Shown: positions 39,901 through 64,000 of the stretch, piece after piece
How the letters are laid out: every line of letters starts with the position of its first letter
How positions within the stretch are numbered: the first letter of the stretch is position 1
Assembly: GCF_040938485.1 (NCBI RefSeq)
Contig: NW_027271204.1
Span: forward strand, 620,001 to 684,000
DNA length: 64,000 nt
Reading direction: 5' to 3'
Origin: Diadema antillarum
Lineage: Eukaryota
The notes under the pieces: model-generated
The model's database searches: none
Seen by the model: only the letters and a program-made list of their open reading frames with translations
Told to the model about the DNA's origin: nothing
Made by a program: the position numbers and the translations under genes

Positions 39901-42900
39901 CACACACACAAAAAAAAAAATATACGTACATTGTATATGTATATAAATGCATATGTATGTGTACATGCTTATATCGGGTGTGTTCCCATTTTCACAGCGT
40001 AATACAGTTTGGATGCAGTATACACATCCAAATAAATTGCGTGACCACAGACAATTGGGGACAAGAACGCCTCAGTAACGCTTATAATGCAATGGTGTAC
40101 AGAGAGCGTGTGTGAATGCATACATCGTGGCATGCCTACCCCTGTAAAGTTTATAGTCCATGCAAATGACTTTCTCAGTGTTTGTGATGTTGACGCTGAG
40201 ATTATTCCCTTGTCGAAAACTAAGTGGTATCAGTGATGATCATTATTATAAATTAATAAATCAACAACAAAGGAAAATTTTGAAAGACGTACAATAGTTG
40301 GTTTTCCTGCCCAATTTCATCAGATTCGCATTCGATTTAACGATGCGGTCATTCAAGTTGGAGTGAATTTGAATGATCACCGAGATCGACATTCAAAAAG
40401 GTAACTAGTTCATTCAATTTAATTTCATTAGCATGCGATTTCATGAGTTTCTCACACAAGGGTGTAAAAAGGGCATTCAAAAAAAAATGTAAGTCAATGC
40501 ATTCAAATTCGAATCAGCACCTCCGTGGAGAGGCTTACGGAATTTAAAGTCACGACAAGGCAAACAACTACAAAGAATGGGCAGTCTTTTTCGTTGTTGC
40601 TTTTATTCTTTGTAGTTACTCAGCAGTTTAAAAGTATGCAAATTTGATATACCTTCAAATGTGATTTTGACTCATACTAAATAACTCGTATAACCTCACT
40701 TTCATAAGAATGCATTTACACGTTATTCATAGAGTAATATTATTTAGCAGCTGCTACAATACAGAGTATGCGTGAACATCTCAATACGTACACAATAATG
40801 GTGGATGAAGCACGACCTTCATGCTAGAGTCACACACAGCCGGGTCACAAAACGATTTGATTCGGTTGAAAATGAGCCGGATTAGTCCCGGAATGGAGGG
40901 TAATTATTTATGCTACAGTCACACAAGGCCGGATTTCGAATCGGGTCCAAAAGGAATTAAAACCGTATGGACCAGGTTCGAGCCGTAGAGACCCATATTG
41001 ACCCGTAACGAACCATATAAAAATCCGCTTTAAATCCTTTTCATCCTTTTCGACCCCAGTATCGACTCGTGTCAACCCTCTACGACCCGTACCTACCCAG
41101 ATGTAAACCTTGTCATCATCTGTTGCATGAAGGCAATGCGGTATACGGCAAGGGTCCATACGGTTTTACGCTGCGCGTTACAGCGGTTCGATGCGAGTCA
41201 ATGCGCTGTTCGAACAGGGTCAATTTGGATATCAATACGGAATTAAAATCCGTGAAAAATTTTGAACATGACCAATTTTTTTTTTTTCACCGCCGCGCCG
41301 TATCGTAGCCCCCGGAATCCATCAGGAATTGACACGGGTTACGATGCGGGTCAATTCGGGTCTCTACGGCTCGAACCGGGTCGATACGGTTTTAATTCCT
41401 TATGGTCTCGGTAGGAAATCCGGCTGTGTGTGACTCTAGCATGACAACCAGAAACTGGTGATATTATCTTTTGGTAAATGGGTCTATACCATTTACAGCG
41501 GAGCCAATTGCGGCGACTTATGATCGATAATATGGACACGGGAAACTAAGGAATGAAATTAAAATGAATCAATTTGGATTTGGATGTACATAGGACCCCT
41601 AAAATATTCTAGGATATGGCCAGTTCCTAAATGTTACATATACTGTTAGCGATGACTTGAAAATTATAGAAAGGTAGCCAGGAAAGAAATACATCCAAAA
41701 CAATTAAGATAATTAAATGAGACTTTGAAATGAAAATGAAATTGTATCATCCGATTGTATGACAGTGAAAAAAGGTCCGTAGAAACTGTGTATGTTGACT
41801 GAATTTGAACTTTCAAAATGCAAAGCTGTGTTCCTATAAATGAAATTGAAAGTGGTATTTGGCGCGAATTTAAATGTCTATCCAGCTGGCGCGAAATTGA
41901 ACGCCAACTTTGAGTCGTTGAATTGAATGAATTTCCCCCTAAATTGAATGACATGAAATATAAAAGGAATGACAAGAAATGAAATAGAATACTCAAAGAA
42001 TTAAAATGGACCGTAAGAGTAGAGCAGTGACCCAAATCGCTTGAATTTGAATGCCTTTTCATTAATTCGAATGCAAATCTGATGAAATTAGGCGGGGGAA
42101 ACCTATACATGGCGTATAAAAAAGTTAAAATTTTGAAAATCTTTTCATGAATACATCTCAAAATGTTTCGGAGAGTTTTTTTCATATTCATGGATGCCCA
42201 ATAGACTCATCTTTCAAGTGCAATCAACCAAACAAATTTTTGTTCACGCTTGGTGGAACACTGACGCTCTTTGTCCAGAGTGTGAAAAATGACTTGCGCC
42301 AAATTGAAAGAAGATGGAAAATTCAGCCAGCAGTCCAAAGAAGTTTTCTCATTCAAACAAATTGCTCTTTTGCTCACAATTTTAATCATGTTATGATAGT
42401 TTAGGAATTTTCTGGCGATTTTCTGTCACGTTTTAAATGATTCCATTGTGTAATAGAAGGTTGATTATCAAAATCATGCACAGACATATCGAACCCACAT
42501 GCCAGTCCCTCAATCAAGAAGGAAAGTACAAAATTAATGCATCCTCAGGTCATTCAATCAATACCATCAATCCAATCAATCAATCAGTCCAATCAATTGA
42601 TCAATACATCAATCAATCAATCCAAGAATCAATCAATCAACAAATCAATCAACAAATCAATCAATCAATCAATCTGTCACAATCATTATTGTATGCATGT
42701 TTAAAGTGACAGATCGACATAGGAAATATCACCTTTCAATCATTCAATCAATACAATCAATCCAATCAATCAATCGATCAAATCCAATCCAATCAATCAA
42801 TCAATCAATCAATCATTTAATCAATCAATCAATCAATTAATCAGTCAGTCACAATTGTTGCATGTTTAAAGTTGTAGATCGACATAGGCATAGGGAATAA

Positions 42901-45900
42901 CCTCCCTCCCCCCCCCCCCCGTGACTTAAAGGCTCGTTTTTTGTTTTTTGTTTTTAGGTTTTTGGTATTTTGTTCATCCAAACTGGCCACTGCTCTCTTC
43001 CCTTGTTGTTTCTACCACCAGCAAAAGAGCATTTTTTTTAATGGGAGCATTATTTGGACTGCTGGCTGAATTTTCCATCTTCTTTCAATTTGGCGCAAGT
43101 CATTTTTTACACCTTGGACAAAGAGCGTCAGTGTTCAGCCAAGCGTGAACAAAAATTTGTTTTGTTGATTGCATTTGATAGATGAGATCGATAAATATCA
43201 TCCGTAAATATGAAAAAATCTTCTAATATTTTTAAATGTAATTTAGACATTTTTTTAAGTGTAACTTTTTTTTGATACACCCTGTATAACAACAAACTAA
43301 TTATGAAAAAATCATTACAGCAGGACACTGCCCACAACAAGACGTTTTAATAAACATGCCGAGCAAAATGAGGATTAGACTCAACAAAGGATAGACATCT
43401 CAACTAATAATAGTCCCCCACCAACAATAAACAAAACAAAAAATGAATGTCAATAGAACATTACCTGTTTCATCAAAAATCTGACAAAAAAATGAGAAAA
43501 TAATGAATGTCTAGATATTGCCGTGTTTGTACGAAACAGTTCTTGAATAATTCAAGGAATAAGATAGCACAGGTATATACCTGAATAGAGAGAATGATGG
43601 AGGGGCAAAAACACTTAAGGCGAAAAAAAAAATAGAGATTGGTGTGTGATGGAGTTGGCTGGTACAGGGCGATCCACTCGCAGGCTTCAGTGTATTGCGA
43701 CATAATAATGATGACCAGATCTGTAACAATATTGTAGTACGATCTCACATTAAGGGGGATGGCTAGTAACTGATCAGTGGGAATCAGTGGGAATGCTGGG
43801 GGATGCCTGTTCCAATTTTTGTAGGATTCATTTAAGAGTACATTATACATAGTGATCTATTGATGTGTGAAAATTATTTGCTTCGGAACAGTCTCTTAGT
43901 CAAGTAAAATGTGCAGTTTAATGCCCCGTCACTGTACAGACATGCTTAAAATGCACATTACTTGAATATGAGACCATTCTGAAGCAAATAATTTTCACAC
44001 AACAATAGATTTATAATGCACTCTTAAATGAATCCCACAAGGATCCCCCATCCCCAATCATCCCCCAGCATTTCCGCTGATTCCCACTGATCAGTAACTA
44101 GAAATCCCCTTTAAGTTTCCTGAACAGAACCCCCCCCCAAAAAAAAAAGAAAAAAAAAAAGTAGAATGCGTGGCTAAGAGCGGGCCAAAGAGCGCTTGAA
44201 TACAAACTTCACATCCTCGACCTTTGCAACATTGTGTGTATGTGTGTGTGTGTGTGGGGGGGGGGGGCTGAATGTGCCTGTATACATACATCTGCCATTT
44301 CATTCAAATTGTCCATCATTTCTCCAAAGGCGTTGGTGGCTATCATGTGCTTTAGAACTTGTCTTCCATCCGAAGTCTGTATACTCTTTAGGATTCGCAG
44401 CAATGCCGGGCGACGGTTCACGAGAAGGCGGGCGACACGGTGGTTGCTTTCCAATGGAAGACCGATGTGGAAATCTATGCCTGAGAGGAAATAGATTTAA
44501 ACACTATTAGCACAAAAAAATGAAAAGGAAAATGTGCATGTGTTCATGAGAGAGGATGTATGTATGCTTGTGAAGGCATATAGAAATTGTACTTTAAAAT
44601 GTCAATGATTACAAAAACAGATATCAAAGTTTGAACAGTGAATGAGTCCTGAGGACTTGATTATATAATAGATAATATGAAACGCGATCACCTTTACGCC
44701 CGTGTATACTGCACATTGGTGAATTTGGCGCTAATAGCCGCGGGAAATCACGAAAGACTATTTTCATCAAGGAGATATAAATATGATATTATGAGTTACT
44801 GTAGAATTTCGTTCTTACTGGGAAACAGATTTGCCGTTATAGTACACCCAGGTAGCGTTAAAAAAAAAAATCCTCCCCCTCTCTCCCTCTCCTTAAAGGG
44901 CTCCTGAAATCTAAATGCATGCTGATTTGTATTGATTTATGATATCCTCAACATCACTTCTGCGGTGAAATGAATATCTAGAAACACACCATGGTATATC
45001 TTTAATGAGTTTTTCTTCTATTTTCCTTCAACTTACTTGGGAACGCCACAAAAAGTCCTCCGAAACCACTATTCCTCAGATGACCTCATCTGTCAATCAT
45101 TGCTAAAGTACTGAAATGTTTAACAAAAGACGTTGGAATTATGCACCTTCCCCTCGACTCATCATGACTTGCATGTTTCTAGCTGTGTTCAGACGGAGGC
45201 AGTTTTGGTCGGAGTAACTTCGGAGGAAGGGTCGGAGGAAGCTTGGTCGGAGTAACTTCGGAGGATAGGTCGGAGTAGTGCCCGTCTGAACAAGGTCGTG
45301 GCAACTTTCTCCGAACGAGATACTCCTGAGTTTTCTCAGGAGTATCTCGCTACCACGACTAGCCGGTCGGAGTAAATTGCCCGTCCGGACAAGCCCTCGG
45401 AGTATCTATGAACTTACATGCCGTACGACCTAGGTAAAACTTCCTGGGTCAAATCGCAATGTTGACATTTTGCGACTACACGTGCGCGTGTAGTGCAATT
45501 CTAACCTCGTCGATCGCGACGAAGAAGCTAGCGCTCATGTGATATTAATGTGACTAACAAAAGGCATGAGCCATGTTCACACGTATTTCTAGTCGGAGTA
45601 AAAATTTATGGCACGGCAATTAAAATTCAAATTAATGCATATCTTACCACGACCCGTGTGTCCACACGACTGTCGTGCGAAGAAACTCCGACCAATAATA
45701 TGTGCGAGGGTCGGTGTAACTTCCGGAAGTGGTAGCGCCGCGCTCGTCGACCATGCGATTGTTTTTTACCAGTTGCATTGTCTTCTCCATTCTTGTTAAC
45801 GGAAATTTCTGCATGAGCGCTAGCTTCTTCGTCGCGATCAACTAGGTTAGAATATTGCACTACACGCGCACGTGTAGTCGCAAAATGTCAACATTGCGAT

Positions 45901-47616
45901 TTGACCCAGGAAGTTTTACCTATAGTACGGCATGTAAGTTCATAGATGCTCCGAGGGCTTGTCCGCACGGGCAATTTACTCCGACCGGCTAGTCGTGGTA
46001 GCGAGATACTCGCTAGTATCTCGTTCGGAGGAAGAGGTCGTGGTAAGTTCCTACTATCGGAGGAAGTTGCCACGACCTTGTTCAGACGGGCACTACTCCG
46101 ACCTATCCTCCGAAGTTACTCCGACCAAGCTTCCTCCAACCCTTCCTCCGAAGTTACTCCGACCAAAACTGCCTTAGTCTGAATGCAGCTATGGTGAGGG
46201 AACATGCAAGTTATTCTGACTCGAGGGTAAGGTGCATTCCAATGTCTTTTGTTAAACAAATGAAATAGGTTCGTTAGCATGGTTAGTACGAAGGTTCGTA
46301 AGGAGGCACCTTCTTTTCGTTTTCGGATTAACAAACCTTCAGAACAGCGAACCTATTTCATTTTCTGGTAAAAAAAATACTTAATTGGGAATTACGACCC
46401 TTATTTCATTAATTCAGATTCACAAACCTTCGGAATAACGATAGCGTACCTCATTTGATTTTCGGATTAACGAACTTTTTATGATTTTTATTTTCGGATT
46501 AATGACCATTTAAGTATGCCTATTGAGATTGTGTCTCGGAAAACGGACCTTCGGAAAAACGAACCTTCTTTCATTTTCAAATCAACGAACCTTCGGAATG
46601 AAGGTATACCATTTCGTCCCTTTTCTGAATAAGGAATCAATTTGACTAACTAAAGGAGCTATCAATTGACATTACCGAAAGGCTCTGCTATCTCCTCCTT
46701 GAAAAACTGTCCCAGAGTTCGATGTTGAGGGTCAACTCGCCGCAAAAGCTCATTGGCTAGTGGTCCAAATGTGAAACCATGGTAACCATGGGTGTGGCCA
46801 TCATACTCCCATTGTGGCTCTGTTTTTGCCATGAGTTCACCTGCCTTGGCAACATCTTGTAGCAACTCGAGGCTCAAACCAGGTGGTGCGGATACGGCAA
46901 GTCCCGCCTTAAAAGAGTAAGTAAAACTTCTTGCAATCACGTGTCAATCACATCATACATGCCATTATGTGAAAGCGATTCGCGTAAGAATGGATTCCAT
47001 CATTAAGATGTAATAGCACGTTTATAATTACTATCTACGTTGCAAAATTTAGTGTCATTCTCAATTGTACATTCTTTTAATTGTTTGTGAATGTGTTTCA
47101 AAAACAAATTTAATAAACTCGTTTATACATAATTTCACCTTACCATCATATTTTTATCAATCAGTCCCAGTTGTTTCAAGTGAATTTTACTCTTACTTAT
47201 CAGACTAACTTATAAATGCGTTCGAATTTCCCTTTCAGATTTATTTAAAGTCTTTTTTACCATTGATTACTTGTAACCAGGCCGTTCAAGTTTCCTTATA
47301 AAAGAGTTAAATAACCTTATGCTCCATCATGTCTTTGACGGTAACCTTCTCTTTGCCCTTCTGTGCGAATTCCGGCCAATAGAGGGCGACTGGTTTGTTG
47401 TAGTCCAGCAAACCTCGATCTACAAGCATGGCAATGCACACTGACGCAACCCCTACATCGGGGGAAAAAAGAATGATAATTTCAATACGGGAAATAAGGC
47501 TTGTAGTAATAATCTCCTTGATTTTTTATAGAGGACACATACAGTGAGTACATGAAGGCAAGCTGAGAACTGCACGTTTACCTTAAAAAACAACAACAAC
47601 AAAACTCACACACAAC

Positions 47617-60242: not shown

Positions 60243-62295
60243 CTACAGGATAACGCAAACGGATGACGAGGCGTCGTTACTGTCCAGTCTCTGGTATCGG
60301 TAGCCCGCGTCACCGTCCGCGGCGTAGACCGCGGCGCCGTTCATGTGCGACGTTGCCGCCCCGTGTGGCGCATTAATCACATTTGCGTTCACATCGTTGG
60401 CAGGTTGCTGCTGTGCTGCTGTCTTTGGCACTGATGATGACTTCCGGGAAGACTTTCGCTCCCTATCGCCGTCGGAGTCGCTCTCACTTCCTGAATCCGA
60501 TCCGGATCCGGAACTGCTTGTGTAAGAATCGTACGAGTCGTACGACGAACTCGAGTAGTCATCAGAATCCGAATCCGAATCTGAATCCGAATCAGAGCCC
60601 GAACCGCTGGAACTAGCTTGACCTACCGACGACCTATAGAAAAAAAAGATGAATGATTGAAATGAAATGATGAATTTGTTTTCCTCCGTGAAAAAAAAAA
60701 ATGAGGCAGATTGATTATTCTTAGAAAAAAAGAACAAACCCAATTTTCAATGATAGATTTACAGTTACCACCAACTAAACACTGCTAAAAGGCAGTTCGC
60801 ATGTCTATTGTGTACGTGATTTTTAGTTGTATTTGCTTGTCGAAGGAAAATAACCATGCATGGCGTAGACATTGGTAGATTGATTCGTAGTAATTTCGTA
60901 GGATTTTGGAATATCTGAGAAATCATCCAATATTGACAAGAAAACAATATCATTATTTACTAAACATATCTGAGATTACAAAGCTATCCATTGTCCAATG
61001 GCTTTAAACATCTTTAGACGTATCTCTCATTAATGTCCAAGCAGAAATTACTGGAAACTGCACGGTGTGCCTACTAAACAACGTTCAATCGTTCAATCAA
61101 AAGCTCAATCTTAACATTTATTTCAAACATTATGCCACTGGAGCGTGTCAGCCTGTTGATTCTAATATTGTCATAATAGCTTGTGAAATGTTTTAGCAAG
61201 AGACATCGATTTCAAAAAGTACGAAGTGATGTCAGTGTCTAAGTACCGCATTTGATCAAAGGAGATGAATCAAACTAACCTTCTTCTGCTACTAGCCTTT
61301 GAACTCCGTCTCATGATAAGGGATCTCTCCCATTCCTTGAGGTCACCTCCTTGGGACAGCCGCCGCATAATCTGGCTTCCCTCGATGCCATTTGGATTGA
61401 CAAGGGCCACGTAGGGAGGCTCGTATGATGACAATCTGCGACTGCTGACACTACCTCGTCTGGATCCGGCTACCGAAGATCTCCGACTCGAGACGGAGTC
61501 ACGCCGACTGGAGGTCGATGCTTTTCGGCTCGATACGGAAGGACGTCGACTAGAAACCGAGTCCCTCCGACTAGAAACCGAATCTCTCCGACTAGATACA
61601 GAATCCCTTCGACTTGATGACGAGCTCCTCCGAGGACTCTTACTGGAGTGTCGTCTAGCGTCGACGTACTCGCGGGCGAGGCTTGCGCTGGATGGGCGGC
61701 GACGATAGATCTGATCGTAGTCGTTCATGGAATGGGCGCTCACGTACGACTCCCTGTCGCTCGAAATTGATAGCCTTGGCGCATACCTCCCACTCCAACC
61801 GTTTCCGTTCTCGTACGCCGACATGATGTCCTCTACAGTGGAGAAGCGCACACTGGAGCTAGGCGAATCCCTACCCCGGCTGCTACCCGTGGATCTCGAG
61901 GATGACTTCCGCTTGATGATGGTCGGAGAAGGCGGCCTTCCGGCTTTTTCGTCTCGTCGTGTGCTGCTGACGCGTCGAATTTTGGGGTAACCCTCGTATG
62001 TGTCGCTGTGTATCGACGAGCTCTTCGACATTCTGCGATCCAGCGAGTGACTGCGATTGGAGTTATACCCCGACTCGGAAGACGTGCGGCTGCGGCGTCG
62101 AAGCTCCAGCTTCCCGCTGCTCTCCGAACGTCGGGTTGGCGGAGGATAGTAGATGCGGTCGTGGTGTGGATTGCTGAACGAGTTCTGGCGACTGAGTCGT
62201 CGGGACAGCCGCGATCGATCTTCTATCTCCTGGGCTGTGACTGCAGCATTGTACAGCTGCAGGAATCTCATGTGTTGGTCGTAGTTGAAATCCAT
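60243..62295 (-). CDS. Uncharacterised Ser/Arg-rich disordered protein with C-terminal CaaX (CVIL), 468 aa; coding exons 62295-61280 and 60633-60243
   Basis: The 341-codon ORF starts in a good context (aagcATGG). It ends at AG|GTTAGT (phase 2) and joins tttctatag|G in frame with the 60243-60743 ORF (1016+391 = 1407 nt), finishing ...SSSVCVIL*. Both exons are GC-rich relative to their flanks. Confidence 0.85.
61430..61625 (-). repeat. Coding 21-bp tandem repeat (about 9 x SSRRxSV)
   Basis: SSRRDSV SSRRDSV SSRRDSV SSRRPSV SSRKAST SSRRDSV SSRRSSV AGSRRGSV SSRRLSS. Confidence 0.9.
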
Positions 62296-62628
62296 GCTTG
62301 GTCGATTTCAGTCAAAGCGTACACAAATATTACTCACTTCCTGTTCCAAATGGCAAGTTCAACTGTAGACGAAGTAGAAAACTCAAATGGAAGAAGTCTC
62401 TTACACGTCACGCTTAGGTTGAGCTAACATTCTCTCATTGTGCTTTACTATCAAATAAGCTGTTTCGTCTTTTCTTCATATCAGGAATTTTCTTGAGCAA
62501 ATGAAGACGTGAGAAGAAGTTAATATATCCTTCACCGTACGTAAAATCATCTGAACCTGTTAACTTCTGTGAGCAATTATATTTCTGTAGCGGTGGTCGT
62601 CGAAAATGACGTCAAATAAACTTTCTAC

Positions 62629-62892
62629 CAGGTCCTCACAGGCGTACTATCGACGAGCGCATCAACTGAGAGGTTGTCATCTCACAAAATGTGTATTCAC
62701 GTGACCAGCTGTCCTGCCGAGTCCTCTGACGCCAAGGAGAGACGGATCTGGGCTATCGATCTATATCTGCTCTTGCTTCAACGAATGGCGTTATCGATTG
62801 TTTGCGTGTTCTTGTGCCGCTACGATCACTCGAGTGGTTTGCTTTCTGACTCCGCTCTCATCAACACGTCCCGTATATTTCAGATCGAGGTC
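62629..62892 (-). other. Probable non-coding 5'-UTR exon of the Ser/Arg-CaaX gene
   Basis: Pyrimidine-rich acceptor (tttctctttcacactacacag|) at 62893, donor CTG|GTAGAA at 62628, and stops in all three frames. A second strong acceptor (ttttctacttcgtctacag|) at 62363 opens the large coding exon 67 nt before the ATG. Confidence 0.5.
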
Positions 62893-64000
62893 CTGTGTAG
62901 TGTGAAAGAGAAAGAAAATGGCGAAGAAATTAATCATCAGTTTATCTTTATCCTACCGACTTCGCAACATTTTGAATAATTCACAAGCATAATACATGTG
63001 ACTTTGAATAATATCACCTTTCGACATCACTATGCACACTGATTTTCACAAAGATTTGGAAAGACGTTTGGTTTCGTTTCACTTTCTCAGGTTGTTGAAG
63101 TCCATAATGTTGCCATCATTTTACTTTGAAACATATCGATTTCGACCCTGGATGAGTCTTTTAGTACTTAGAAAAAGGACATGAAAGCCATATTTTTGGG
63201 GGTGCAAAACCACAGTAAACATACGCTCTACTTTGCAGAGGAGTCTTGGTACGATCCTTCATAAGACCTGAATTTGACAGTCTTACTTTTTTAGAGGTAC
63301 AGGGTTTTGTGCTTCGTAAGTTGTCAGCTGTACCTACTAACAGATAGTCAACAGGTCTGTTGAATGTCTTATGATATCATCAAACCATAATGCTGAATGA
63401 ACCGAAATCAAACCACAAATGCCTGCCACTAAACAACAGATATGAAGGACTCATACAACACTATTGATTTCAAGTATTTCGGTCCTAAAATAAACAACTA
63501 AAAGTTGATCTAAATCCTATCTTTATCAACAACAGGAACACCAACATGTTTTCCATGAGCAACATCAAGTTAAGTCAGTTGATATCCTATGTTCAGTTGA
63601 ATACTTCTCCAGAGTCCGTTTCATGAAGTTATCCCATAAAAGTTTGTACATAAATCTCAGAGATCGGCCAAAGTCACCTATTTCTATGTACACATGTAGT
63701 TATGTAGAGAAGTAAAATTCATTTCATGAAATCTCTCATAAGTGTGTCTTATTCCTTTTGAGCAAACAGTCTCTCATAAGACTTTTATGAAACGTTCCAC
63801 TGGCCCTTCTTGGCCAGACAATGATTATTAGGCCTGTCGCACCGCGCGTTTGATAGATTTTGAATGCCAGTAACCATGGTAACTGATGGTTTCAGTGACG
63901 AAATCCTACGCTAGGTCTATGATAAACATGATAAAGAAGTTCCAGCAGAATACCAAGGGACAGCAGAACATGGAATCTAGAAATCGCCTCTGCTAACCTT

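What the first reader, a model, noticed from the sequence alone, without database searches (positions are those of the whole stretch)
61400..61700. Tandem polymer of the SRRxSxxS PKA/GSK3/CK1 relay motif in a prenylated, unrecognised protein
Seen: about nine 7-residue repeats (SSRRDSV) and about 18 RRxS sites overall in a 468-aa low-complexity protein ending CVIL. Established: RRxS-hydrophobic is the optimal PKA site. Ser at -4 and +3 are primed GSK3 and CK1 sites, the same SRRxSxxS arrangement as in Ci/Gli phospho-clusters, and here each repeat's +3 Ser is the next repeat's -4 Ser. CaaL predicts geranylgeranylation. Inference: a membrane-tethered, cAMP-driven ultrasensitive charge switch (polybasic plus prenyl, as in K-Ras4B, MARCKS or the Smoothened tail) or a multivalent 14-3-3 / beta-TrCP scaffold.
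Basis: partly seen in the sequence, partly recalled or inferred. Interest (0 to 1): 0.75.

Follow-up and report, generated by a model that had tools for sequence, protein, structure and literature searches.

The report
Lipid-anchored sea-urchin PP1-docking phosphoprotein
This is a real gene, found so far only in sea urchins, for a floppy protein with a conserved lipid-anchor signal, about 20 conserved kinase target sites in 7-residue repeats and, as found here, a conserved motif predicted to dock protein phosphatase 1; it resembles known lipid-anchored phosphatase regulators, but none of its functions has been tested.

Summary
A two-exon gene on the minus strand (62295-61280 and 60633-60243) encodes a 468-aa protein ending CVIL. 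It has 19 RRxS sites, against 2.5 expected by chance, and ten 7-residue units at aa 222-292.

The gene is real. The exon structure, both RRxS arrays, the acidic Ser/Asp tract and the C-terminal CaaL box are kept in Strongylocentrotus purpuratus and two Lytechinus species. Synonymous sites are saturated, while only about 29% of non-synonymous sites differ. No relative outside sea urchins was found, and no Pfam domain. Apart from one N-terminal helix the protein is predicted disordered.

A complex model put its Val and Phe into the canonical RVxF groove of protein phosphatase 1 (score 0.71; best control 0.00).

My best reading is a geranylgeranyl-anchored, disordered PP1-interacting protein whose basic region is a multi-site substrate of PKA-type kinases. 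The closest functional analogue is TIMAP/MYPT3, which is not a homologue.

Prenylation, phosphorylation, PP1 binding and expression are all untested. I rate it a new variant of a known kind, of moderate interest.

The parts
61280..62295 (-). Coding exon 1 (aa 1-338 plus two bases of codon 339). It starts at the ATG at 62295-62293. The donor is AAG|GTTAGT after 61280.
   Evidence: S. purpuratus and L. pictus have the same exon end and phase (AGAAG|GTAA), as do two further echinoid contigs. The two haplotype copies differ at only 0.39% of exon 1 bases, against 3.9% in the intron.
60634..61279 (-). Intron, 646 nt, GT...AG, preceded by a polypyrimidine tract.
   Evidence: The orthologous introns are about 545 nt in S. 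purpuratus and about 535 nt in L. pictus.
60243..60633 (-). Coding exon 2 (last base of codon 339 to aa 468, plus the TAG stop at 60245-60243).
   Evidence: A 6-nt indel between the haplotypes preserves the reading frame.
62185..62283 (-). N-terminal helix, aa 5-37. It is the only confidently predicted structured element.
   Evidence: AlphaFold2 on a 6-sequence alignment gives block pLDDT of 74-88 here, against a mean of 47 for the whole of exon 1. Q7, R10, F11, L14, Y15 and A18 are invariant.
61912..61923 (-). TIIK (PIIK in the orthologues), aa 125-128. This is a SILK-like motif 21 residues before the VxF core, preceded by an invariant PP[ST]P.
   Evidence: It does not match the strict [GS]IL[RK] pattern, and it was not among the confident contacts in the complex model.
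61765..61854 (-). Predicted PP1-docking string, aa 148-177. It consists of SVRF (RVxF core), five residues, IM (phi-phi position), then the invariant W167-S-G-R-Y, P173-R174 and S176-I177.
   Evidence: SVRFSTVEDIM is the longest invariant run in the family. In the complex model with a PP1 catalytic subunit the score was 0.71, 0.72 and 0.71, with the best control at 0.00. V149 and F151 sit against PP1 residues 168-169, 242-243, 261 and 288-293, which form the RVxF groove (PMC3387161).
61420..61632 (-). Array 1, aa 222-292: ten 7-residue units of type RRxSVSS, each with one [RK][RK]xS site.
   Evidence: The orthologues have 4-6 units at the same place and in the same phase.
61306..61404 (-). Conserved island between the arrays, aa 298-330 (VNPNGIEG..IMRRLS..LKEWERSLIM), with two weakly predicted short helices.
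   Evidence: KEWERS is invariant.
61280..61311 (-). Array 2, exon 1 part (aa 329-339, continuing into exon 2 to about aa 342). It is short here, with 3 sites, against 6 in the full-length orthologues.
60462..60632 (-). Acidic Ser/Asp tract, aa 340-396, net charge -13, with many SxxD/E (CK2-type) sites.
   Evidence: It is conserved as a tract (-10 to -14) in all four full-length orthologues. Its length is polymorphic between the haplotypes.
60246..60257 (-). CaaL box CVIL (aa 465-468), a predicted substrate of geranylgeranyltransferase I.
   Evidence: It reads CVIL in L. pictus and L. variegatus and CAIL in S. purpuratus, while the preceding tail is poorly conserved. CVIL was fully geranylgeranylated by human GGTase-I (PMC11152559).

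Best explanation
The gene encodes a protein seen so far only in sea urchins. It is almost wholly disordered and sits on the cytosolic side of membranes. From N to C terminus it has five parts:
1. A short helix.
2. A strongly basic Ser/Arg-rich block of about 300 residues with 16-20 conserved [RK][RK]x[ST] sites, most of them in two 7-residue-phased arrays on either side of a conserved island.
3. Within that block, an invariant SVRF-x5-IM string.
4. An acidic Ser/Asp tract.
5. A CaaL box.

Proposed mechanism:
- The C-terminal Cys is geranylgeranylated and tethers the chain to a membrane.
- The SVRF string docks protein phosphatase 1 in its RVxF groove, so the protein acts as a membrane-targeting PP1 subunit.
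- PKA-type basophilic kinases phosphorylate the arrays. This takes the basic block from about +36 to about 0, or below if the primed Ser at -4/+3 is also used.
- The docked PP1 reverses this in cis.
- The arrays thus act as a multi-site, kinase-versus-phosphatase charge switch that changes what the basic block binds: acidic lipids, its own acidic tract, or partners.

Shown here: the gene model, conservation, purifying selection, motif counts and phase, disorder, and lack of relatives.
Predicted by a controlled model: the PP1 docking geometry.
Inferred only: lipidation, which kinase acts, the switch behaviour, and the tissue.
For: Gene and selection:
- Orthologues share the two-exon structure.
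- pS is 0.76-0.84 (saturated) against pN of 0.28-0.29 over exon 1.
- Exon 1 differs at 0.39% of bases between haplotypes, against 3.9% in the intron.

Anchor:
- CaaL is kept in 4 of 4 full-length orthologues.
- CVIL is a complete GGTase-I substrate (PMC11152559).
- There is no signal peptide or transmembrane segment; the maximum 19-residue hydropathy is 0.27.

Phosphosites:
- 19 RRxS against 2.5 expected.
- RRVS110, RR.SS199-203, RRLS314 and the array sites are conserved.
- The two arrays together hold 13-15 sites in every full-length species, although the split between them shifts (12+3 here, 7-8+6 elsewhere).
- Site count times 2 roughly equals the net charge of the basic block in every species.

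PP1 docking:
- The longest invariant run is SVRFSTVEDIM.
- A VxF core followed by x5 and phi-phi is present in all five sequences that cover this region.
- The complex model scored 0.71 against a best control of 0.00. That mark was reached by 51 of 78 solved complexes and 2 of 108 mismatched pairs. The runs agree in at least 28% of contacts, and the partner pLDDT is at least 39.
- Val and Phe land on I169/L243/L289/C291, the canonical groove. These groove residues are invariant in 20 PP1 sequences from diverse metagenome contigs.
- Non-basic RVxF variants exist (LIRF in Phactr1), and PP1 partners use strings of about 27 residues of similar length (PMC7599070).
- PP1 regulators are typically disordered and are themselves PP1 substrates (PMC11536154).

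Precedent:
- TIMAP is a prenylated PP1 subunit controlled by PKA-primed GSK3 phosphorylation at -4 (PMC3560227).
Against: - The three published RVxF patterns, which I recalled from memory, all fail because the two residues before Val are Pro/Ser-Ser rather than basic.
- The complex tool warns that a pass can reflect the model's memory of solved RVxF complexes. It was not calibrated on disordered peptides, and the partner pLDDT is only 39-41.
- The PP1 used was a metagenomic orthologue, not the sea urchin's own. Its own PP1 gene is split into exons.
- The phi-phi and SILK-like contacts were not among the confident ones.
- No RNA run was listed, so expression and tissue are unknown.
- Nothing shows that the Cys is lipidated or that any Ser is phosphorylated.
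- A single geranylgeranyl group with no nearby second signal does not say which membrane is used.
Confidence: 0.5

Rival explanations
1. The protein is a membrane-tethered, cAMP/PKA-driven charge switch that runs a PKA to GSK3/CK1 relay along the SRRxSxxS polymer. The SVRF block has some other role.
For: The motif arithmetic is correct and the phase is conserved. Charge cancellation on phosphorylation works out in every species. PKA-primed GSK3 and CK1 phosphorylation and Arg-cluster/phospho-cluster switches are established for Ci/Gli and for the Smoothened tail (PMC3567827).
Against: The sequence does not identify PKA, GSK3 or CK1 as the kinases. A GSK3 relay stops after one step, because the residue four before the relay Ser is the variable x position (often Asp). 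The basic block is not next to the anchor. The model leaves the most conserved block of the protein unexplained, whereas PP1 docking explains it.
Confidence: 0.2
2. A tether at the nuclear envelope or chromatin. The Arg/Ser-rich block would carry the protein into the nucleus and bind nucleic acid or chromatin, while the prenyl group holds it at the inner nuclear membrane. Mitotic kinases such as Aurora B, together with PP1, would release and rebind it during the rapid cleavage cycles. As far as I recall, lamin B and Drosophila Kugelkern work in a comparable way.
For: The net charge is +27 to +39 with many Arg clusters. As far as I recall, RRxS followed by a hydrophobic residue also fits Aurora kinases, and Aurora/PP1 antagonism at RVxF proteins is well known. 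TIMAP shuttles between nucleus and membrane (PMC3560227).
Against: I know of no geranylgeranylated inner-nuclear-membrane protein; lamins and Kugelkern are farnesylated. No nuclear import signal was tested. RS/SR dipeptides make up only 12-14% of residues, and there is no RRM.
Confidence: 0.12
3. A multivalent phospho-dependent scaffold for 14-3-3 or for the beta-TrCP ubiquitin ligase.
For: Many RRxS sites could give weak, non-canonical 14-3-3 binding. SSRRxS has the same spacing as DSGxxS if the first Ser is phosphorylated (consensus in PMC3567827).
Against: There are no matches to the 14-3-3 mode I pattern in any orthologue. The only true DSGxxS (aa 385) is absent from the other species. Two arginines lie in the middle of the would-be degron.
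Confidence: 0.08
4. A homologue of the nucleolar phosphoprotein SRP40/Nopp140, as the automatic NCBI names suggest, or an SR-type splicing factor.
For: NCBI names the S. purpuratus and L. variegatus proteins 'suppressor protein SRP40(-like)'. The protein has a Ser/Asp-rich acidic tract.
Against: No Pfam family, including SRP40_C or RRM, matches at E up to 1. There is only one acidic tract, not alternating acidic and basic repeats. An exhaustive profile search finds nothing outside the echinoid family. A CaaL box is out of place in either family.
Confidence: 0.02

Closest known systems
TIMAP (PPP1R16B) and MYPT3 (PPP1R16A), the prenylated PP1 regulatory subunits of vertebrates
   Same: Both have a C-terminal CaaX box needed for membrane localisation, an RVxF-type PP1-binding motif, and a PKA site that primes GSK3 phosphorylation four residues upstream (Ser337/Ser333 in TIMAP). 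Phosphorylation changes both PP1 activity and localisation (PMC3560227; PMC6737228, listed).
   Different: TIMAP and MYPT3 are folded ankyrin-repeat proteins that are farnesylated and carry one PKA/GSK3 pair. The protein here has no ankyrin repeats or any Pfam domain and is predicted disordered. It ends in CaaL (geranylgeranyl) and carries 14-21 RRx[ST] sites in tandem 7-residue arrays. It is not a homologue.
[quoted passage not shown]
   Same: In both cases a disordered string of about 27-30 residues starts with a VxF-type core and has hydrophobic residues 5-8 positions later. Phactr1 also lacks the basic residue before the core (LIRF) (PMC7599070). Here the invariant block runs over aa 148-177, and Val and Phe dock in the same groove in the model.
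   Different: The order and spacing of the later invariant W167 and R170/R174 do not match the published R-then-W string. Only the VxF contacts were confident. No sequence homology was found.
PKA/GSK3/CK1 phospho-clusters of Ci/Gli, and the Arg-cluster plus phospho-cluster modules of the Drosophila Smoothened tail
   Same: The spacing is the same: an RRxS priming site with Ser at -4 and +3. Each Arg cluster is paired with a phospho-cluster, so that graded phosphorylation neutralises positive charge (PMC3567827).
   Different: Those proteins have three separate clusters inside large folded or transmembrane proteins. Here there are up to ten head-to-tail units in an orphan disordered protein. 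No conserved beta-TrCP degron is present. There is no homology.
MARCKS and K-Ras4B lipid-plus-polybasic electrostatic switches (from my own knowledge)
   Same: Both combine a lipid anchor with a basic stretch whose phosphorylation should weaken binding to acidic membranes.
   Different: In those proteins the basic patch lies next to or near the lipid. Here the 60-70 residues before the Cys are about neutral, and an acidic tract lies between the basic block and the anchor.
SRP40/Nopp140 (the automatic database name)
   Same: Both have a serine-rich acidic tract with CK2-type sites.
   Different: The SRP40 C-terminal domain is absent and there are no alternating repeats. The name reflects a low-complexity match only.

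Membership tests
CaaX substrates of geranylgeranyltransferase I | Cys at the fourth position from the C terminus, followed by two aliphatic residues and Leu | tested here: met
   The window protein ends CVIL. The orthologues end CVIL, CVIL and CAIL. CVIL was fully modified by human GGTase-I in yeast (PMC11152559).
CaaX substrates of geranylgeranyltransferase I | The Cys actually carries a geranylgeranyl group | not testable with these tools
   This needs metabolic labelling, a gel-shift assay or mass spectrometry.
Substrates of PKA-type basophilic kinases | The R-R-x-S/T consensus, ideally followed by a hydrophobic residue, and conserved across orthologues | tested here: met
   There are 19 RRxS, 8 of them followed by V, I, L, M or F. 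The orthologues have 14-21. Several single sites are invariant.
Substrates of PKA-type basophilic kinases | Phosphorylation by PKA in vivo or in vitro | not testable with these tools
   No phosphoproteome was available, and no RNA run was listed.
PP1-interacting proteins (RVxF class) | A match to the published RVxF sequence patterns, which require a basic residue one or two positions before Val/Ile | tested here: not met
   Three patterns, recalled from memory, give no match in any orthologue. The residues before Val are Ser and Pro/Ser.
PP1-interacting proteins (RVxF class) | A [VI]-x-[FW] core with two hydrophobic residues 5-8 positions later, lying in a disordered and conserved region | tested here: met
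   VRFSTVEDIM is present in all five sequences that cover the region. It is the longest invariant run and lies in a low-pLDDT region.
PP1-interacting proteins (RVxF class) | Docking of the core into the PP1 RVxF groove | tested here: inconclusive
   The model supports docking: score 0.71 against a best control of 0.00, a mark reached by 51 of 78 solved complexes and 2 of 108 mismatched pairs. The runs agree in at least 28% of contacts, and the partner pLDDT is at least 39. Contacts are to PP1 residues 168-169, 242-243, 261 and 288-293. This is a prediction that may draw on remembered complexes, not a measurement.
TIMAP/MYPT family | Ankyrin repeats following the PP1-binding motif | tested here: not met
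   No Pfam family matches at E up to 1 in the window protein or in two orthologues.
Ci/Gli-type PKA-primed clusters | A PKA site with Ser at -4 (GSK3) and at +3 (CK1) | tested here: met
   SRRxSxxS occurs 6 times, against 0.16 expected. S[RK][RK]x[ST]xxS occurs 3-8 times in the orthologues.
Ci/Gli-type PKA-primed clusters | A conserved beta-TrCP/Slimb degron (DSGX2-4S or a close variant) | tested here: not met
   The window protein has one DSGSES at aa 385, which is absent at that position in the orthologues.
14-3-3 ligands | The canonical mode I motif (RSxSxP type) | tested here: not met
   There are no matches in any orthologue. The looser R..[ST].P pattern also gives no match in the window protein.
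K-Ras4B/MARCKS-type switches | A polybasic stretch adjacent to the lipid anchor | tested here: not met
   The net charge of the tail is +1, +5, -1 and -2 in the four species. An acidic tract lies between the anchor and the basic block.
SRP40/Nopp140 | The SRP40 C-terminal domain and alternating acidic and basic repeats | tested here: not met
   No Pfam hit and a single acidic tract.
SR splicing factors | An RRM plus an RS-dipeptide-rich domain | tested here: not met
   There is no RRM. RS/SR dipeptides cover 12-14% of residues in the full-length proteins.

The most novel reading that the evidence does not exclude
An orphan, sea-urchin-specific subunit places PP1 on a membrane through a geranylgeranyl anchor. 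It carries its own tandem polymer of PKA-type sites, so that kinase and docked phosphatase compete in cis over about 15-20 identical units. That would make it a built-in, ultrasensitive or timed charge switch, with unit number tuned by repeat gain and loss between two arrays. It would be a natural polymer version of the single PKA/GSK3 module of TIMAP, possibly acting at fertilisation, cleavage or in sperm.
Probability: 0.2. Interest if true: 0.65.

Novelty: new variant of a known kind. Interest (0 to 1): 0.45.

Why it matters
If the reading holds, a disordered orphan protein assembled from short motifs alone has reached the same design as the ankyrin-repeat TIMAP/MYPT3 subunits: lipid anchor, PP1 dock and PKA-primed sites. 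It would do so with the phosphosite module multiplied into a regular polymer.

That would give a simple natural system for asking how the number of identical sites sets the sharpness or timing of a kinase/phosphatase switch on a membrane. Sea urchin eggs, embryos and sperm are classical material for cAMP and PP1 physiology.

It also corrects a misleading database name ('suppressor protein SRP40'). If the PP1 docking fails at the bench, what remains is an uncharacterised, lineage-restricted, probably prenylated phosphoprotein of modest interest.

Tried and rejected
- **Pfam.** Scans of both exons and of two full-length orthologues found nothing significant.
- **Word-index protein searches.** Three searches (whole exon 1, aa 1-212, aa 145-212) found only echinoid relatives plus two unrelated low-complexity hits at E of about 1e-4.
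- **Exhaustive HMMER search.** A profile of the N-terminal 212 residues against 1.84 billion representatives found only the family's own cluster and one fragment.
- **ESM Atlas.** Feature searches gave no usable hit. The Atlas model of the L. pictus protein has pLDDT 0.42.
- **AlphaFold2 on exon 1.** The model is disordered apart from helix 5-37, so no fold search was worthwhile.
- **RNA runs.** None was listed, so the splice and expression could not be checked with reads, and read laying was not used.
- **Synteny.** 10-kb flanks compared with S. purpuratus and L. pictus gave no tblastx or blastn match.
- **Literature.** Searches for the accession and for the SRP40 name in sea urchin found nothing relevant.
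- **The animal's own PP1.** Its gene is split into exons. The intronless Metallophos ORFs in the genome look by eye like purple acid phosphatases and an ApaH-like enzyme, not PP1. An intact PP1 ORF from a metagenome contig was used instead. I took none of those contigs for human.
- **AKAP-like helix.** I considered by eye whether the N-terminal helix could bind PKA regulatory subunits. The hydrophobic spacing does not fit the pattern I recall, and the idea was dropped untested.
- **N stretches.** Stretches of N in the window were left untouched.
Full report
**What is there**

The window is animal DNA of about 38% G+C with few long open frames. The longest, 62295-61270 on the minus strand, ends three codons past a good donor site (AAG|GTTAGT after 61280). 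A polypyrimidine tract and TATAG|G at 60634/60633 open a second exon in the matching phase, which runs to a TAG at 60245-60243. An in-frame TGA lies 15 nt upstream of the ATG, and the start context is CCAAGCATGG.

**The observation**

The protein is 26% Ser and 14% Arg. It has 19 RRxS sites, against 2.5 +/- 1.5 (maximum 8) in 2000 shuffles, and 6 SRRxSxxS against 0.16 expected. From aa 222 to 292 (window 61632-61420) there are ten consecutive 21-nt units. Seven of them match SSR[RK]xS[VT] in strict phase.

The four units that encode RRDSVSS differ from each other at 2-7 nucleotides, and every difference is synonymous. The peptide is therefore under selection, not just recently copied.

**It is a real, conserved gene**

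Protein searches recovered these relatives:

| Source | Accession | Length | C terminus |
|---|---|---|---|
| Strongylocentrotus purpuratus | XP_003729045.2 | 439 aa | CAIL |
| Lytechinus variegatus | XP_041479902.1 | 448 aa | CVIL |
| Lytechinus pictus | XP_063965345.1 | 449 aa | CVIL |
| two further echinoid contigs | – | exon 1 only | – |
| one fragment | – | 169 aa | – |

- The NCBI models of S. purpuratus and L. pictus have the same two coding exons, with the donor at the same codon phase.
- The window protein is about 57% identical to these orthologues, which are 74% identical to each other. The window therefore comes from a sea urchin outside the Strongylocentrotus-plus-Lytechinus group. 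I did not identify the species.
- Between three lineages, synonymous sites are saturated (pS 0.76-0.84) while pN is 0.28-0.29.
- The genome (1.75 Gb) holds a second copy on another contig that is 98% identical and looks like the other haplotype. Exon 1 differs at 0.39% of bases, the intron at 3.9% and exon 2 at 5.4%, including a frame-preserving 6-nt indel in the Ser/Asp tract.

**No known family**

- Pfam finds nothing.
- An exhaustive HMMER profile search of the non-repetitive N-terminal 212 residues against 1.84 billion representatives returns only the echinoid cluster and one fragment.
- The ESM Atlas gives no usable neighbour and a pLDDT of 0.42.
- AlphaFold2 on six sequences gives a mean pLDDT of 47, with one confident helix at aa 5-37.
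- There is no signal peptide or transmembrane segment.
- The database name 'suppressor protein SRP40' reflects low-complexity similarity only.

**Conserved architecture**

All four full-length proteins have three charge blocks:

| Block | Net charge |
|---|---|
| Basic block | +35 to +39 |
| Acidic Ser/Asp tract, 53-57 aa | -10 to -14 |
| Tail ending in CaaL | about neutral |

- The basophilic sites sit in two 7-residue-phased arrays on either side of a conserved island (VNPNGIEG..IMRRLS..KEWERSLIM).
- The window species has expanded array 1 and shrunk array 2 (12+3 sites). The other full-length proteins have 7-8+6, so the total stays at 13-15.
- Twice the number of [RK][RK]x[ST] sites nearly equals the net charge of the basic block in each species (+39 to -1, +35 to +3, +38 to +2, +36 to 0).

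**The anchor**

CaaL is kept although the tail before it is poorly conserved. CVIL was completely geranylgeranylated by human GGTase-I in a humanised yeast assay (PMC11152559). Lipidation here is inferred, not shown.

**The new lead: PP1 docking**

The longest invariant run in the family is SVRFSTVEDIM at aa 148-158. Invariant residues continue to I177.

- The run has a V-x-F core and two hydrophobic residues after five spacers, as in RVxF-phi-phi strings. An invariant IIK lies 21 residues upstream.
- The strict RVxF patterns I recalled fail, because the residues before Val are not basic.
- To test the idea I needed a PP1 catalytic subunit. The animal's own gene is split into exons. I therefore took an intact 327-aa PP1 ORF from a metagenome contig (E = 8e-216 to PDB PP1-alpha). 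The groove residues are invariant across 20 such ORFs from diverse metagenome contigs.
- The complex prediction of PP1 residues 1-305 with aa 115-180 of the window protein scored 0.71, 0.72 and 0.71, with the best of three controls at 0.00. That mark was reached by 51 of 78 solved complexes and 2 of 108 mismatched pairs. The runs agree in at least 28% of contacts, and the partner pLDDT is at least 39.
- The confident contacts are aa 147-152 and 154 against PP1 residues 166, 168-169, 242-243, 261 and 288-293. V149 lies on 169/243/289/291. This is the Val pocket of the RVxF groove described for the RRVSFA peptide (PMC3387161).
- Phactr1 shows that a non-basic core (LIRF) can work, and that such strings run for about 27 residues (PMC7599070).
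- PP1 regulators are usually disordered and are often PP1 substrates themselves (PMC11536154).

The tool warns that a pass may reflect memory of solved RVxF complexes and that disordered peptides were not part of its calibration. I therefore treat this as support, not proof, and put PP1 binding at about 55-60%.

**How it most likely works**

The protein is a geranylgeranyl-tethered, disordered PP1-interacting protein. Its basic block is phosphorylated at many RRxS sites by PKA-type kinases and dephosphorylated by the docked PP1. This flips the block from strongly positive to neutral or negative, and so changes its binding to acidic lipids, to its own acidic tract or to partners.

The gene model, conservation, counts and disorder are shown. 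Docking is predicted with controls. Lipidation, the identity of the kinase and the switch behaviour are inferred.

**Comparison with what is known**

The nearest functional analogue is TIMAP/MYPT3. These are prenylated PP1 subunits in which a PKA site primes GSK3 four residues upstream, and phosphorylation changes localisation and PP1 activity (PMC3560227). They are farnesylated ankyrin-repeat proteins with one such site pair. The protein here has no repeats of that kind and no homology to them.

However, the beta-TrCP degron and 14-3-3 motifs are not there. The K-Ras4B picture fails because the basic block is far from the anchor.

**Verdict**

I rate it a new variant of a known kind (a lipid-anchored, PKA-regulated PP1 partner) in an orphan echinoid family, with interest 0.45.

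Noticed in passing
G000:C973:203064-206699 (L004) against window 60160-63795 (L003): A second copy of the whole locus lies on another contig at 98% DNA identity. Together with the 1.75 Gb assembly size, this suggests uncollapsed haplotypes. Exon 2 (5.4% different, six amino-acid changes and one SD indel) is far more polymorphic than exon 1 (0.39%).
   Followed up: partly
window 46665-46940 (-): An open frame with a significant Pfam Beta-lactamase match (PF00144, E = 5e-9). It is probably one exon of a beta-lactamase-like (LACTB/esterase-type) gene downstream of this locus.
   Followed up: partly
window 12658-13696 and 41664-44510: Two pairs of open frames have very similar translations about 30 kb apart: 12658-13059 with 41664-42191, and 13226-13696 with 44196-44510. 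This points to a segmental duplication or a dispersed repeat. Neither frame has a Pfam match.
   Followed up: partly
window 52202-52639 (+): A 145-aa open frame with an Arg-rich N terminus reads to my eye like the start of a PIF/Harbinger-type transposase. It has no Pfam hit, so the resemblance is unconfirmed.
   Followed up: partly
L005 1348-2409 (+) and L010 1237-2256 (-), both in G000: Two intronless genes of 353 and 339 aa have signal-peptide-like N termini and full-length Metallophos matches. By eye they are purple (tartrate-resistant) acid phosphatases. Each is also present as a second haplotype copy.
   Followed up: no
L012 1327-1833 (-) in G000:C528: The sea urchin PP1 catalytic subunit gene has an exon ending at ...GFYDECK that runs straight into a long (TG)n microsatellite in the intron.
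   Followed up: no
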